From Bugula neritina (taxonomy: Eukaryota; Animalia; Bryozoa): DNA of 64,000 nucleotides. The notes under the pieces were generated by a model. It did no database searches. It was not told where the DNA came from and was given only the letters and a program-made list of their open reading frames with translations. Positions 1-57,952 of this stretch are shown in pieces (position 1 is the first letter of the stretch; each line of letters starts with the position of its first letter). A program made the translations under genes and the position numbers. Location: assembly GCA_964035545.1 (NCBI GenBank), contig OZ037771.1, positions 7,287,190-7,351,189 on the forward strand. The letters run 5' to 3'.

Positions 1-3000
1 GGTTTGAGCGAAACATACAAGCTGGGAAGTGGACATCCACGCCCAGGATTTCTTTATGAATTTGCGCTAAGGACAATTAGTTTTGATCAGCTTTCCTCAC
101 CATCTACAAACTATACTATAAAAATGCGTAAGTTAAAATTGCTTTAAACAGCATTCTGATATTACCCTAAATACAAAATCAATAGTGATTCACATATTAG
201 TTTTATTGGTATTCTAGAAATCCAATAAAAACGAAAAAAATCTTAAGTTACTTTTCATTCAGAAAATAAGGTCACTTCAAAAAATAGGCAGTCTTTTGCA
301 TGACTTGCTTTTTTCATTAATGCACTGCTGGTATAAAAGAAATGCTAAAAAATGTGTAAGCAATATAATGTCAATATAATGAACTGTTAATTTAGCAACC
401 AATGATGTGCATATTTATTCAACTAGAGCTGTAAATTACAATATAACGTTGACTGATATATTTAAAAATAAATGCTTAATCTTCTCCTGTAGCTCCTGCA
501 CCTCCTCAAGGCTTTAAATTAATTACCGATACACTTAACCCAGTAAGAACATTTAGCTGGACTCTTTATCCCAATTCAGAGCAGGACAGAATGTACATCA
601 GGTTTTGTCAAAAAGCTAATCCCTCTGCATGCTTGCTAGAAAAAGATGTCCTAAGTTTTTCCTCTCTCAAAGTGACTATCAACCCAAAACTGCCATTTAA
701 TCAGTACATTGCGTATGCTTTCACTCAATCGAGAGGGATAAACAGTTCTCACAGTAATGTTGTGAGTTTTACTAAAGGTAAAACATGAATCATCTTTATG
801 TATAATTTACATGCAAAAACTGTAGTTATATAATATCATTGGCCATTACTTGTATAAATATGACATTATAACCAATTGATTTTAGAATAGCTTTGATGAT
901 AAGAATTAACAAAATTATAACAATACTGCTATCAAAAATTGAAAGTAACACTTTCATTTGAATTTATAGTTTTTCTTCTACTTGCTAAAGCATAAAAATG
1001 TAACATTTATTTTAATGAAGTATTGCAACAATCATAAAACATGCATTTGATTGTGTAAAAGAGTTCACACTGGTTTTGGCATTTTCTGTAGAACTATTTT
1101 TTAAACATCATGAAACATTGGAACAAAGGAAAGTTCCTTTCAAACTGACCTAATTTACATCATAATAAGTTATTTAACAAAATGCTTGCTTGCTTGAGCA
1201 AATATTAGATATAAAAAGTGGTAAACTTCAAGTGTGATATTTTTATCAATACAAGTCTTTATAACAGTGCTTTTTAGTGCTAGATATTTTCAAAACTACT
1301 ATATAATAAAGACGAACGTTGTTTTTTATGTTTTTAAATGCTTTTGATTTAAATCTCTGTGTTTTTGAATAATTATATTATTAATTTCACTCTATTTATA
1401 AGCTCATCTCCCTTTGTATTAAAGTTTTCCTTTACGTTTTTGGGCTAGGTGTATCTAACTCTTTTGTTTTGTTTTAAGAGCCTGCTTGTCCACACCCTGA
1501 AGCTCTTAATGGTAAAATACTTAATTCTAAAAATATAACACAATATTACTTCAAAGCTGAAAATGCATACCAAGTTTTGTGTTCTGATGGATATGAACTA
1601 AAGCCCCTGAACGAAACTTATAAAAACTATAATTCAACATGGTACTGTGATAAAGATCGCCAATGGGTTCGCAATTCTACATGCACGGGTAAAATATATA
1701 TTAGCAAAAATTTTATATAATATGTAGTACACACAATGCATTTAAAATCAATGCAATTGAAACACTTTTATGGTTTTGAAATTTTGTAAAACATCAGTTT
1801 TACAGATCTGTCTTTGGGTGTAGGTTACATACGTATCAAAACTTAAACCATAGTTTATTAGATTACACTCTCTATTTTACTACAAACTGTACATGATAAG
1901 AGACCTTCTAGGTAGCATTGTTTTTTATTTTATATTATACATATATTGCCAATAGAGTCTTATTATAATTTCATAAGCTATATTGTATTTTCAATACTAT
2001 AGTAAATAACAATATAACTATTTATAGCATTTATGCTTTAAAGACTTAGTACAGCTGCTGATATAATCAACATGTTAAGCAATTCTCTTATTTTTTATAG
2101 TCAATCATTGCAATACTTTTTTATTAGACTTGAAATTTTTTAATATCAAAATATGTATGAAAGCGCTATAGTTATTAAAATATATAATTGATATAAAAAT
2201 TGCTTTGTGATTGGATTATGCAAGTTTAAATTATTTTAGGAAAGTTTATGCACTGCTTCACACTATCAAACCAAATTCTATTTTTACGGAGTGTTCTATT
2301 AAAACACAAGAAAACATTTGGCAATTATCAAAAGGAAATTTTTTGAATAATAAAAGTTGAAGTGATGTTTAAAATGTGAGGATTTTTTAATTTTATTATT
2401 TTCTGTTTGCTTGTTCAATTGCATGTTATGCAATTATAAAACAATTTGTTTTGTAGCTGTACCAGGCACACTGATTCTTGTTCTTATTGGATCTGGATTA
2501 GCCATTATGTTGTTGCTAGGAGCCATAGTTTATGGGTCATACAGGTGAGCTTACTTATTTGAGTATTATGGTATCACCACCAATTAGAATTAAAATTACC
2601 TGTCTACTAAATAGCTCAATTTAAAGTTTATAATGTTACATCAATGAATTAAACAGAAAAAATAAGGCTGAAAATTGTAAAAGCAAAAATGATTCAAGTT
2701 GCAAATTTTGTTTATTTTCTGCCCGCGTAGTCTTTTTAACATTTAGAGTTCACTTTTCTATGACCATTTTTAGTATGAATTATAGGTAAGGTTTTTTTTT
2801 AATTTTAGCTTGAAAGCTAGAGATGTGAGAGAGAAAAGAATTGAAGCAGATGCGATAGCTGAAAATCGTCTAAGAGCTTCCACCATGATGATAAATGCAC
2901 AGAAAGCTTCTCTCAATGCTCTTGCTTCCTCATCAGCACTAGTAACTCCCTCCTTTAAAACACCAACCCCATCTCACAAGACAATGCACGCAAGGAACTC

Positions 3001-3025
3001 GTCATTTTTTCAACAAGTGCAATAG
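1..3025 (+). CDS. Receptor paralog A (5' part outside window): FN3-like domains - Sushi - TM - tyrosine-free tail
   Basis: Exons <1-127 ([11 protein letters not shown]), 493-777 (PAPPQGF..FSW..C-x7-C), 1479-1688 (four-Cys Sushi, CPHP..C..WYC..W..C), 2457-2544 (TM LILVLIGSGLAIMLLLGAIVY), 2809-3025 (tail). All GT-AG and in phase; matches the 3' half of gene B exon for exon. Confidence 0.9.
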
Positions 3026-56000: not shown

Positions 56001-57952
56001 GCCACTTACCTTTAGTTACGTTTCTGGCTTCACTCTGTATACTGGTCACGTTATTTGGTTTTACATGATGCAAAACAAATTGGTAGACCCCAACTCCGGT
56101 ATCATTAAATGAGTAAGTGTTTGCTCTTGGAAATATGTCTGTCTCTATCTGCTTGCACTGCGGTTTTGGTTGGAAAACCTTGCAGTAGGTTATTCTAAGT
56201 TTGTCTACATTCTCAGTGACTGGTTCATTAACTCTGTAGTTTATTGAAAATCCACTGCCAGTACTTCTCAACCTTTTAAAGCTGACTGCTGCCACTACAA
56301 TATTTGAGAATAGTATGTTTAAAAACAAAAACAGTACCATGTTGCAAAGTTTTGAAAGGCCAAAGGGGTTCTAGAGAACATGTCGTAGTATTTTATTACC
56401 CAGTGGTTCTGTGCTGTAATTTGCAGGCTGGTTTGAACCTCATTGTGACGCGGCATTTTAAAATTGCAGACTTTGTAACAAATAGTAATAAGAATAATAA
56501 TATACAAACGGCCACTACAGTGAAAAATAAATCTACACCTCAGTGAAAACTGAGTCTACATCTTCAACAGAAATTGAGGTCTCAAGTCTAAGTGGATATA
56601 GTGTCACGCCTATAAGATGACGGTGGGAGCTTAATGCTGGTGTGGGATAGAGGAAGTCACAACGATTCTCAAGTTATCTAGCCGAGAGAGTTCAGTGATA
56701 GGTCTGTTGACATTGGAGCAGGTGGTAGGACAGAATAATAGAGATTCTACTACTAGATCAACAAGGTAATAGATCCAGCAGGTGACTGGTACTGGGAGGA
56801 TCCCGATACAAAAGAATTCAGCCAAGACTTCAGCAAGTTTACAGACGCTCGTTCTTGTAGAATTTCAGTGCTTGTGATTCTTCTTATCTCAAAGTTGACA
56901 TTAATTCCAGCGTCAATTTAACAAGGCCAGAACTGTCTTGATGCTAGCTTACCTTATCTATGTAAGTTAAAGTACAGTAATAAGTAACAGTAATATGACA
57001 ACGGCTCAAATAAGTGATCTGACACAGAAAATGTACTGTACATGTTTTACCAACTGAAATAGAAGTCTTGTTAGGTTTCTCACGAAAGTCTCGTATAGTT
57101 ATTGATAGGTTCCAAAGGGGAACAAACTGTATAAATTAGATATGAGAAGTTACTGCAGTCAAGAATGCCGCATCAATTACACCAATGATCTAAGGATGTC
57201 CAATCTTCATGGAACAGCTACTGACTTACACCAAGCCATCTTCACACGTCAGTACTGCTACACTAACTTCAACCAACAATAACATTATGCATGTCAGGAA
57301 ACATCATTTAATAGCCATTGGCTAGCCTTGAGTTAAAAAAATCAGAGGTGTTTGGTGGGAGTCTAACAGTCAGCATGGCCTTTTTGTAATTCATGTTAGT
57401 AAAAATAAATAGAAACCCACGTATTACAAATGCATTCATAAATTATTAGTTATACTTAGCTTGTCAAACCTATGTCATTAAACTTAAGCTATGTATTTGT
57501 TTTCCATAGAATTAGCACATTCAGCTGTTTTGAGCTGTTATGTTAGCCAACACATCTTGTAAACTAGCTAGCTATATAAGGCTTTGCAGGCTGCACATGT
57601 GTTGGTTCTAGACTTGGCCTAGCCATGGTAGGCCAAGTGCTAGAGCCATGACCAATGCAGCAGTTTTATAGAACTATAAGTAGAGCCAATCAGGTAGTAC
57701 AGTTATTCTTAATAATTACTATAATATTTTTGCATTTCAAGAGAATATGAAATCTTAACTGTTTGACAATAGCTTGGTGACATATTATACATTTTTGCAT
57801 ATTTTTACTAACATGTTTTATACATTACTATTATAGTTTTCACGTTGCCGTAATTATGGCATCAGTTGAGACTTACGGCTCCAATAAAGTACCATCAACA
57901 TCATAATATACAAATTGCCACTACAGAGATAGTCATGTAAAAATGACACCAT
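50082..57952 (-). CDS. Receptor paralog F: SP - no N-terminal Sushi - 4x FN3-like - Sushi - TM - short basic tail, about 585 aa, 10 exons
   Basis: Exons 57952-57877 ([27 protein letters not shown]; least certain), 56294-56010, 55589-55444, 54770-54638, 54012-53824, 52776-52636, 52492-52199, 51968-51771, 51002-50915 ([25 protein letters not shown]), 50289-50082. Total 1758 nt, in phase. Confidence 0.82.
50331..50434. repeat. (TA)n microsatellite
   Basis: Directly visible. Confidence 0.95.

What the first reader, a model, noticed from the sequence alone, without database searches (positions are those of the whole stretch)
1..57952. Cluster of six divergent Sushi-FN3x4-Sushi-TM receptors: a candidate undescribed recognition-receptor family
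Seen: six paralogs with conserved exon sizes and phases (e.g. 133-, 141-, 88-nt exons), intact frames, mixed orientation, two recent pairs (A/B tandem, C/D inverted) and two older members (E, F). I do not recognise this domain order as a named gene family. Established: clustered, diversifying Sushi-containing surface receptors serve in invertebrate self/non-self recognition (Botryllus fester family, Ciona vCRL1). Inference: a birth-and-death immune, allorecognition or gamete-recognition receptor locus.
Basis: partly seen in the sequence, partly recalled or inferred. Interest (0 to 1): 0.85.

Follow-up and report, generated by a model that had tools for sequence, protein, structure and literature searches.

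The report
Bryozoan Sushi–FN3 surface receptor family
The moss animal Bugula neritina has six intact genes here, from a family of about two dozen, for undescribed cell-surface proteins built from Sushi and fibronectin-III modules; they are conserved rather than hypervariable, so they look like ordinary lineage-specific binding receptors, not a self-recognition locus.

Summary
Six paralogous multi-exon genes (A to F) lie at window 1-57952. All have GT-AG introns, open frames and conserved exon sizes and phases (133, 141 and 88 nt). The encoded proteins run: signal peptide, 0-3 N-terminal Sushi/CCP modules, four ~95-110-aa beta modules, one membrane-proximal CCP, a TM helix, and a divergent tail with no known domain. 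AlphaFold models of the two single-exon modules (F1, F4) are confident FN3 folds, although Pfam fn3 never matches them.

The six genes belong to a larger family. There are 16 FN3-bearing genes and 3 CCP-only genes, on contig C7 (7.11-7.35 Mb) and in a second cluster on C9. Their N-terminal CCP arrays range from 0 to about 16 modules. An exhaustive profile search of 1.84 billion proteins found only unannotated single-exon fragments, so the family is undescribed.

The tests I could run do not support the immune, allorecognition or birth-and-death reading:
- Paralog pairs show dN/dS of 0.27-0.48.
- Genes D and E have collinear one-to-one orthologues in another sample, with dN/dS of 0.26-0.31.
- The one available run shows essentially no allelic variation over 4 kb of gene D.

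No RNA data exist. The genome is Bugula neritina.

The parts
1..3025 (+). Gene A, 3' part. Exons: F3b 1-127 (the exon starts just upstream of the window), F4 493-777, membrane-proximal CCP 1479-1688, TM 2457-2544, tail 2809-3025 including the stop.
   Evidence: Model and translation. The upstream exons S0b, S1, F1, F2a, F2b and F3a were found at G000:C7:7282381-7287093 by tblastn. A is 75% identical to B.
5623..15555 (+). Gene B, 796 aa. Exons: SP 5623-5677; CCP-like S0a 6723-6935; CCP S0b 8199-8393; CCP S1 9182-9382; F1 10096-10392; F2a 10673-10824; F2b 11809-11941; F3a 12306-12497; F3b 12591-12731; F4 13065-13349; CCP S2 13930-14139; TM 14968-15055; tail 15327-15555.
   Evidence: intact ORF, all boundaries GT-AG. 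Pfam Sushi scores 26.0 bits for S0b and 26.7 bits for S1. Pfam does not recognise S0a; its assignment rests on a weak similarity to the S0a exon of gene C and on a six-Cys pattern.
17036..28563 (-). Gene C, 798 aa. Exons (5'->3' on the minus strand): SP 28563-28509; S0a 28013-27822; S0b 27213-27019; S1 26570-26370; F1 26210-25917; F2a 25432-25287; F2b 25041-24909; F3a 23339-23145; F3b 22630-22490; F4 19362-19078; S2 18829-18626; TM 18131-18044; tail 17303-17036.
   Evidence: Pfam Sushi scores 21.7 bits for S0a and 25.2 bits for S2. C is 75% identical to D. The F3b-F4 intron is about 3 kb longer than in D.
28286..29475 (.). Head-to-head region between C and D. Its two arms are an inverted repeat of about 89% identity and carry both 55-nt signal-peptide exons.
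   Evidence: blastn of D against reverse-complemented C. Self-BLAST of ORF fragments in 28303-29561. The rest of the gene pair is 73-78% identical, apart from the F2a exon region at 90%.
29195..38098 (+). Gene D, 799 aa. Exons: SP 29195-29249; S0a 29848-30039; S0b 30434-30628; S1 31072-31272; F1 31440-31733; F2a 33299-33444; F2b 34063-34195; F3a 34573-34767; F3b 35283-35423; F4 35775-36059; S2 36310-36513; TM 36999-37086; tail 37828-38098.
   Evidence: Pfam Sushi matches S0b and S1 above cut-off and S2 just below it. AF2 models of F4 and F1 were built with D as the first sequence. The orthologous contig L028 is collinear with 34239-37889; exons differ by 2-11% and introns by 17.5%.
38419..49431 (+). 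Gene E, 804 aa. Exons: putative SP 38419-38473 (an alternative is 40911-40977); CCP S1 41731-41937; F1 42738-43031; F2a 43375-43526; F2b 44240-44369; F3a 44806-45000; F3b 45732-45872; F4 46607-46900; S2 47421-47630; TM 47878-47968; 215-aa tail 48786-49431.
   Evidence: Pfam Sushi scores 34.2 bits for S1 and 23.9 bits for S2. The first exon is chosen only by its size, hydrophobicity and phase, so it is unverified. The tail carries a 2 x 60-nt coding repeat at 49077-49193 and one ITIM-like motif, VSYDII.
50082..57952 (-). Gene F, 585 aa. Exons (minus strand): putative SP 57952-57877 (the alternative is the ATG at 56340, read straight into F1); F1 56294-56010; F2a 55589-55444; F2b 54770-54638; F3a 54012-53824; F3b 52776-52636; F4 52492-52199; S2 51968-51771; TM 51002-50915; tail 50289-50082. 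There is no N-terminal CCP exon.
   Evidence: A relaxed tblastn of all CCP exons against 56295-58600 found nothing convincing. Pfam Sushi scores 24.2 bits for S2.

Best explanation
These are six functional members of a multigene family of type I membrane glycoproteins, so far seen only in Bugula and unidentified samples. The family formula is (CCP)0-16 - FN3-like x4 - CCP - TM - short tail. The genome, by its size, is Bugula neritina.

Shown:
- The gene structures, the intact frames, and the CCP identity of the distal and membrane-proximal modules.
- The FN3 fold of modules F1 and F4, each with an extra C-x7-C cysteine pair.
- The family size and layout.
- Purifying selection, and retention of orthologues.

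Inferred mechanism:
- The four FN3 modules plus the proximal CCP form a conserved stalk of roughly 15-20 nm (estimated from usual module sizes).
- The stalk holds a variable distal CCP array away from the membrane, and that array binds an extracellular ligand.
- Each ectodomain module is one symmetric phase 1-1 exon or, for F2 and F3, a pair of exons that is phase 1-1 as a unit. Modules can therefore be gained or lost in frame. This explains CCP numbers from 0 (gene F) to about 16 (upstream genes), and the existence of CCP-only genes that lack the FN3 cassette.
- The tails differ completely between subfamilies and carry no known signalling domain. Output would be adhesion, ligand capture, or signalling through partners.

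The paralogs are old, under constraint and kept one-to-one between Bugula lineages. I therefore read them as subfunctionalised, germline-fixed binding or adhesion receptors. The nearest functional analogy is a set of complement-receptor- or selectin-like CCP proteins. I do not read them as polymorphic self/non-self determinants.
For: - Gene models and ORFs.
- Sushi by Pfam.
- FN3 fold: the F4 model has pLDDT 90.4 and matches tenascin, fibronectin and cytokine-receptor FN3 domains at TM 0.6-0.8, with 48 hits at E<=1e-3. The F1 model has pLDDT 91.3, and its best hits are mostly FN3 domains at TM up to about 0.7. The F4 profile's best PDB sequence hit is IL-12 p40 domain 3, E 0.03.
- Family size: 16 open F4 exons. 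The exon map shows 0-16 CCPs and three CCP-only genes.
- Constraint: dN/dS is 0.48 for C/D and 0.27 for A/B, with no ectodomain exon above 0.68. For D against its orthologue L028, dS is 0.205, matching the intron distance of 0.199, with dN 0.054. For E against L029, dN/dS is 0.31.
- Tree: deep branches of 0.5-1 substitutions per site between subfamilies.
- Tails: no Pfam domain and no ITAM. One ITIM-like motif, in E only.
- The genome has thioester-domain (TEP/C3/A2M-type) genes that could supply CCP ligands.
Against: - There is no transcript evidence. No RNA run is on record, so the splice junctions, and above all the first exons of E and F, are predictions.
- F2 and F3 were not folded or searched as whole domains. 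hhalign does not relate them to F1 or F4.
- The ligand, the cell type and the function are entirely inferred.
- dN/dS of 0.26-0.48 is high for housekeeping genes. The most distal CCP (S0a) has the highest value, 0.68. Site-level positive selection at a binding tip is therefore not excluded.
- The polymorphism test rests on contigs of one run, probably the assembled individual itself, from what may be a low-diversity introduced population.
Confidence: 0.6

Rival explanations
1. A complement-control or complement-receptor-like (RCA-like) locus. The CCP arrays bind thioester proteins (C3/TEP) deposited on microbes, on self tissue or on the bryostatin-producing symbiont, and either regulate them or act as opsonin receptors.
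For: The genes are clustered CCP-array genes with very different module numbers, including CCP-only genes. This is the hallmark layout of the vertebrate RCA cluster (the RCA comparison is from general knowledge). The genome encodes several thioester-domain genes on C1, C2 and C4. The most distal CCP evolves fastest, with dN/dS of 0.68.
Against: No anaphylatoxin domain was found in the genome (inconclusive), so true C3 is unproven. Known RCA proteins have no FN3 stalk. No sequence relationship to any RCA member was detected. Gene F has no distal CCP at all.
Confidence: 0.2
2. An allorecognition (colony fusion/rejection) or gamete-recognition locus. It would be a birth-and-death family under diversifying selection, with highly polymorphic alleles.
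For: Bugula is colonial, and no bryozoan allorecognition genes are known. The family is clustered and lineage-specific, and its modules can be reshuffled in frame. Other colonial animals use clustered surface receptors (Botryllus fester, Hydractinia Alr; from the titles and abstracts listed and general knowledge).
Against: - Whole-exon dN/dS is below 1 everywhere in the ectodomain.
- D and E have collinear one-to-one orthologues at dS of about 0.2 and dN/dS of about 0.3.
- All 16 F4 exons are open, so no 'death' is seen at that exon.
- Contigs of the only run match the reference at full depth over 34100-35799 and 36511-38100.
- All 26 listed variants in F4 are paralog C cross-mapping. Only 3 real differences occur in 4 kb.
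Confidence: 0.07
3. Developmental or neural cell-adhesion molecules, acting through homophilic or heterophilic contact. The paralogs would specify tissue or zooid-type contacts, and immunity would play no part.
For: FN3-rich type I membrane proteins with short, unconserved tails are typical adhesion molecules (general knowledge). Purifying selection and orthologue retention fit this reading.
Against: Adhesion molecules of this kind are usually conserved across phyla. This family has no detectable relative outside fragment ORFs from a few samples, in 1.84 billion proteins. Subfamilies are only 24-32% identical.
Confidence: 0.12

Closest known systems
Vertebrate RCA-cluster proteins (CR1/CD35, CR2/CD21, MCP/CD46, DAF/CD55)
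   Same: Both are type I or membrane-anchored proteins whose ligand-binding part is a tandem CCP array. Both are encoded by clustered paralogs with very different CCP numbers, and typically have one CCP per exon (general knowledge). Here one CCP sits on each phase 1-1 exon, with 0 to about 16 CCPs per gene.
   Different: RCA ectodomains consist of CCPs only (with an added Ser/Thr-rich stretch in some, such as MCP and DAF). Here four FN3-like modules lie between the array and a final membrane-proximal CCP. No sequence homology beyond the generic Sushi profile was found. Binding to C3b/C4b is untested.
Ciona vCRL1 and Botryllus fester / uncle fester
   Same: Both groups are invertebrate, lineage-specific, CCP-containing transmembrane receptors encoded in clusters and built from exon modules.
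   Different: Those proteins are defined by high allelic polymorphism and, for fester, extensive alternative splicing. They have no FN3x4 stalk (general knowledge). Here the tests found constraint and orthologue retention, and no allelic variation was seen. Homology to them was not tested, because no reference sequences were on hand.
Class I cytokine receptors and other FN3-stalk receptors (IL-6R, EPOR, PRLR, TSLPR/IL-7Ralpha, Tie2, IL-12 p40)
   Same: They give many of the best structural matches for F1 and F4 and the best PDB sequence match, IL-12 p40 domain 3. Membrane-proximal FN3 modules with intradomain disulfides occur in both.
   Different: These proteins have no WSxWS motif anywhere. 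The cysteine pair is C-x7-C after the B-strand Trp, not the cytokine-receptor pattern. The tails have no recognised box motif or domain. Generic FN3 domains such as tenascin match at least as well, at TM 0.77-0.80.
The CUB-CUB-CCP-TM receptor cluster noted elsewhere in the same genome (s1-456699)
   Same: It is another undescribed, clustered, CCP-containing type I receptor family of Bugula neritina.
   Different: Its architecture is different (CUB domains, no FN3). The earlier agent reported diversifying loops and swapped tails there. I did not examine that locus.

Membership tests
Sushi/CCP/SCR domain (Pfam PF00084) | A sequence match above the gathering score (20.7 bits), with four Cys and a conserved Trp in about 60 aa | tested here: met
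   Matches above cut-off: S0b of B (26.0 bits) and D (27.2); S1 of B (26.7), D (23.5) and E (34.2); S2 of C (25.2), E (23.9) and F (24.2); S0a of C (21.7). Matches below cut-off or absent: S2 of B (15.4) and D (18.1), and no match for S2 of A or S0a of B and D. These still align with their paralogs and keep the Cys/Trp pattern.
Fibronectin type III (Pfam PF00041, fn3) | A sequence match to the fn3 profile | tested here: not met
   fn3 never hit, at E<=1 or E<=10, for the F1, F2a, F2b, F3a, F3b or F4 exons of the genes scanned.
Fibronectin type III fold | A seven-strand beta-sandwich that superposes on solved FN3 domains | tested here: met
   F4: pLDDT 90.4, 7 strands, 48 PDB matches at E<=1e-3, almost all FN3, TM up to 0.80. 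F1: pLDDT 91.3, 7 strands, best matches mostly FN3 at E of about 3e-3 and TM up to about 0.7. F2 and F3 were not folded, because the joined two-exon step was left out.
Class I cytokine receptor (cytokine-binding homology region) | A WSxWS motif in the second FN3 of a pair, and the conserved four-Cys pattern in the first | tested here: not met
   No WS.WS occurs in any of the six proteins. The cysteine pattern is C-x7-C in F1 and F4, and C-x2/3-CC plus one Cys in F2.
RCA / complement receptor family | An ectodomain made of tandem CCPs, with no other globular domain type | tested here: not met
   Four FN3-like modules lie between the distal CCPs and the proximal CCP in all six genes. Three neighbouring genes outside the window are CCP-only.
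RCA / complement receptor family | Binds C3b/C4b-type thioester proteins, and a C3 is present in the organism | tested here: inconclusive
   TED_complement matches occur at several loci in the genome, but they cannot separate C3 from A2M or TEP. The ANATO domain was not found, and its control search was silent. Binding is not testable with these tools.
Invertebrate allorecognition receptors (Botryllus fester/FuHC-linked, Hydractinia Alr, Ciona vCRL1) | Exceptional allelic polymorphism or diversifying selection in the ectodomain | tested here: not met
   dN/dS is 0.26-0.48 between paralogs and between orthologues. No allelic bubbles occur in 4 kb of gene D in the one run available. This is a weak test: one individual, contigs only, and whole-exon averages.
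Invertebrate allorecognition receptors | Genotype at the locus predicts fusion or rejection | not testable with these tools
   This needs crosses or fusion assays.

The most novel reading that the evidence does not exclude
The (CCP)n-FN3x4-CCP-TM family could be the bryozoan self/non-self or partner-recognition system. It might mediate colony or kin recognition, or recognition of the vertically transmitted bryostatin symbiont. Specificity would be encoded in the distal CCP array and varied by in-frame module gain, loss or skipping. If so, it would be an independently evolved recognition system in a phylum where none is known.
Probability: 0.07. Interest if true: 0.8.

Novelty: new variant of a known kind. 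Interest (0 to 1): 0.4.

Why it matters
Bryozoans are a colonial phylum with almost no molecular immunology or cell-surface biology. This work defines a complete, previously unannotated receptor family: the gene models, the module order, a family of about 19 genes in one cluster and 5 in another, and orthologues in a sister lineage. It shows that two of the 'unknown' modules are cryptic FN3 domains that profile libraries miss.

It gives a concrete candidate set for studies of bryozoan innate immunity, symbiont handling or tissue contact. It also removes the tempting reading that clustering plus Sushi domains means allorecognition, because the genes tested are constrained and retained. The symmetric phase-1 exon design is a clear example of how a receptor's reach and binding array can be resized in frame.

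Tried and rejected
- Pfam scans of every exon type returned only Sushi. fn3 did not hit, and no domain was found in the tails.
- Profile-profile comparison (hhalign) of F1-F4 with each other gave no significant relation. The best was F2 against F4, E 0.009, probability 4.6%. An internal-repeat origin could not be shown.
- PDB sequence profile search gave only IL-12 p40 at E 0.03 for F4, and nothing for F1.
- The exhaustive profile search returned two bacterial repeat proteins (P0012, P0015). I rejected them as spurious, because they match only around a 'VKVC...C' motif.
- The search for RNA runs found none, so expression and splicing could not be tested.
- The apparent 'variants' in F4 from read laying are not alleles. 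All 26 equal paralog C.
- The ANATO search for a true C3 found nothing and its control failed.
- Literature searches for the architecture in bryozoans, and for the sample accessions of the related fragments, found nothing.
- I looked for a CCP exon upstream of F1 in gene F, and for extra CCP exons upstream in gene E. None was found.
- A Polinton that earlier readers noted near 'a receptor exon' does not interrupt gene A. All of A's upstream exons are present and collinear.
- I sent no spliced (joined) protein to any search or folding tool. Spliced models were built only inside scripts, for translation, alignment and dN/dS. F2 and F3 were therefore never searched or folded as whole domains.

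
Full report
**What is there.**

The window is AT-rich (about 30% G+C) eukaryotic DNA rich in microsatellites. It is G000:C7:7287190-7351189 of a 216,009,554-base assembly in 321 contigs. This size matches the published Bugula neritina assembly tzBugNeri2.1: 216.00 Mb in 320 scaffolds, with a separately assembled mitochondrial genome (PMC11480708). An earlier agent of this scan also called the genome bryozoan.

An all-against-all BLASTP of stop-to-stop frames showed twelve groups of homologous open frames. 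They recur in the same order six times, on alternating strands, with E-values of 1e-14 to 1e-71.

**Gene models.**

I listed AG and GT sites in each frame and required a continuous reading frame. This gave six models in which every internal boundary is AG...GT and the translation has no internal stop. The models are:

| Gene | Strand | Protein |
|---|---|---|
| A | + | 3' part in the window; the rest lies just upstream |
| B | + | 796 aa |
| C | - | 798 aa |
| D | + | 799 aa |
| E | + | 804 aa |
| F | - | 585 aa |

- F2b is 133 nt (130 in E).
- F3b is 141 nt in all six.
- The TM exon is 88 nt (91 in E).

In addition, F4 is 285 or 294 nt, and the signal-peptide exon is 55 nt in B, C and D (and probably E). 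All ectodomain exons are phase 1-1, except one phase-0 junction inside module F2. The TM-to-tail junction is phase 2.

The first exons of E (38419-38473, or alternatively 40911-40977) and of F (57952-57877, or the ATG at 56340 read straight into F1) are chosen only on size, hydrophobicity and phase. They remain unverified.

**Domains.**

Pfam recognises the distal exons and the membrane-proximal exon as Sushi/CCP. Most scores are above the gathering cut-off.

The four intervening modules are never matched by Pfam fn3, even at E<=10. F1 is about 97 aa on one exon. F2 is about 93 aa on two exons. F3 is about 110 aa on two exons. F4 is about 95 aa on one exon.

I folded the two single-exon modules, using alignments of paralogous exons taken by reference:
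- F4 gave pLDDT 90.4 and seven strands. Foldseek returned 48 PDB hits at E<=1e-3, almost all FN3 domains: tenascin at TM 0.77-0.80, fibronectin, Tie2, IL-6R and EPOR.
- F1 gave pLDDT 91.3 and seven strands. Its best hits were mostly FN3 at TM up to about 0.7: CDO, TSLPR/IL-7Ralpha and EPOR.

F1 and F4 each carry an invariant C-x7-C pair.

F2 and F3 were not folded or searched as whole domains, because that would need the joined two-exon sequence. Their FN3 nature is inferred from:
- their size;
- a 'PxxP' start;
- for F3b, a 'P-G-x-x-Y-x-F-x-A-x-x-x-G-x-x-x-L-x-S' stretch typical of FN3 strands E-F-G (the comparison is from general knowledge).

hhalign does not relate the four modules to each other.

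The tails (69-215 aa) have no Pfam domain and no ITAM, and they are unrelated between subfamilies. E alone has one ITIM-like motif, VSYDII. No protein has a WSxWS motif.

The number of distal CCPs differs between genes. B, C and D have three, although B's first is divergent and not recognised by Pfam. A has at least two, E has one, and F has none.

**The six genes are part of something larger.**

The F4 profile finds 16 open F4 exons in the genome: 11 on C7 (7.119-7.340 Mb) and 5 in tandem on C9 (9.652-9.697 Mb).

I fetched 180 kb upstream and 70 kb of C9 and mapped all exon types by tblastn. This showed:
- gene A complete just upstream of the window;
- five further FN3-bearing genes with about 7, 8, 13, 15 and 16 distal CCP exons;
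- three CCP-only genes that end in an S2-type CCP but lack the FN3 cassette;
- five C9 genes.

The family formula is therefore (CCP)0-16 - FN3x4 - CCP - TM. The conserved part is the stalk, and the variable part is the distal array. My exon map agrees with it.

A tree of F1+F4+S2 gives these groups:
- (A,B) with (E,F);
- (C,D), weakly, with the long-array genes;
- the C9 genes apart from both.

Branches between subfamilies are 0.5-1 substitutions per site, so the family is old.

**Relatives elsewhere.**

I ran an exhaustive HMMER search with the F4 profile against 1.84 billion representative proteins. It gave 17 hits, and every credible one is a 48-200-aa single-exon ORF with intron read-through at its ends. 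The six I traced come from unannotated contigs of two JGI metagenomes, three Logan assemblies and one ENA assembly. No annotated full-length protein was found. The limit of this test is that it used one 94-position module.

Two of these contigs are orthologues, not alleles:
- L028 is collinear with gene D over window 34239-37889. It is closer to D (81-83%) than to C (74-78%).
- L029 matches gene E.

**Selection and polymorphism.**

Nei-Gojobori estimates:

| Comparison | dS | dN | dN/dS |
|---|---|---|---|
| C vs D (paralogs) | 0.30 | 0.14 | 0.48 |
| A vs B (paralogs) | 0.56 | 0.15 | 0.27 |
| D vs L028 (orthologues) | 0.205 | 0.054 | 0.26 |
| E vs L029, F4 exon only (orthologues) | 0.191 | 0.060 | 0.31 |

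- No ectodomain exon exceeds 0.68. That highest value belongs to the most distal CCP, S0a.
- In D versus L028, dS equals the intron distance (0.199). Exons differ by 2-11% and introns by 17.5%.

The predicted exons are therefore constrained coding sequence. The C/D duplication predates the split from the L028 lineage, and D and E have been kept one-to-one since that split.

C and D align over their whole length at 73-78%. Two patches reach about 90%: the head-to-head signal-peptide/promoter arms and the F2a exon. These suggest local gene conversion.

The only sequencing run that holds this DNA is kept as contigs. I laid it on 34100-38100. Contigs identical to the reference cover 34100-35799 and 36511-38100 at depth 115-121. 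That depth is about the total HiFi depth expected from the 27.37 listed for the PacBio run in the genome note, which I read as gigabases. This suggests both haplotypes are the same there.

The 26 listed variants in F4 all equal paralog C, so they are cross-mapping. Only three real differences remain, at 36028, 36072 and 36077. This is a weak test: one individual, probably the assembled one, and contigs only.

**Interpretation.**

The structural statement is secure. This is an undescribed family of modular type I membrane proteins, seen so far only in this genome and in unannotated contigs from a few samples.

How it works is inferred. A conserved FN3x4+CCP stalk presents a resizable CCP array that binds a ligand. 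The symmetric phase-1 exons allow in-frame gain, loss or skipping of modules. The tails are subfamily-specific.

Because the genes are old, constrained and retained, I favour fixed, subfunctionalised binding or adhesion receptors. An RCA-like role with thioester proteins is the most concrete rival, since the genome has TED-domain genes. However, no ANATO domain was found (inconclusive), and the FN3 stalk is foreign to RCA proteins. Allorecognition or gamete recognition remains possible but is unsupported.

**Literature.**

No paper links bryozoans with this architecture. The 2020 draft-genome paper only mentions weak similarities to Alr1 (PMC7576161).

**Verdict.**

'Undescribed family' is supported. 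'Diversifying recognition locus' is not supported. This is a new variant of a known kind of protein (CCP-array surface receptors) and is of moderate interest.

Noticed in passing
An Rfam scan of the whole window at gathering threshold returned no family at all. A 31-aa-equivalent stretch beside a (TA)n tract is 100% identical between 27487-27732 (intron of C) and 33755-34135 (intron of D), so a short repeat element is shared by both introns.
   Followed up: partly
G000:C7 ~7252985-7271884 (about 15-34 kb upstream of the window): This is a gap of about 19 kb in the receptor exon map, lying between one CCP-only gene and the next. It coincides with the Polinton that earlier readers reported as inserted into a receptor exon. 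It does not interrupt gene A. I only observed its position.
   Followed up: no
window 4804-4944, 5961-6313, 11271-11487, 48398-48702: A short dispersed repeat, 65-92% identical at the translated level and present on both strands. It occurs between A and B, in B's first intron, in B's F2a-F2b intron, and in E's TM-to-tail intron. It is probably a small transposable element.
   Followed up: no
window 19400-22470 (intron F3b-F4 of gene C): This intron is about 3 kb longer than its counterpart in D. It contains an inverted repeat (19579-19887 against 19914-20039), which is probably an insertion.
   Followed up: no
window 49077-49193: A 60-nt unit repeated twice inside the coding tail of gene E. 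It encodes '...NYNTG(P/S)(Q/R)EQR(A/T)S(L/Y)NS(Q/H)AQ...'.
   Followed up: no
G000:C9:9661000-9698000: Four tandem family members with a period of about 10.5 kb. Their exons are far more alike (F4 about 95% at the protein level) than the surrounding DNA, which is 81-89% identical where alignable. This points to constraint or gene conversion.
   Followed up: partly
G000:C2:17.63 Mb and 20.13 Mb; C4:4.54-4.56 Mb; C1:18.58-18.60 Mb: Several thioester-domain (TED_complement) genes are present, including a tandem pair on C4. Whether any of them is a true C3 was not settled.
   Followed up: no
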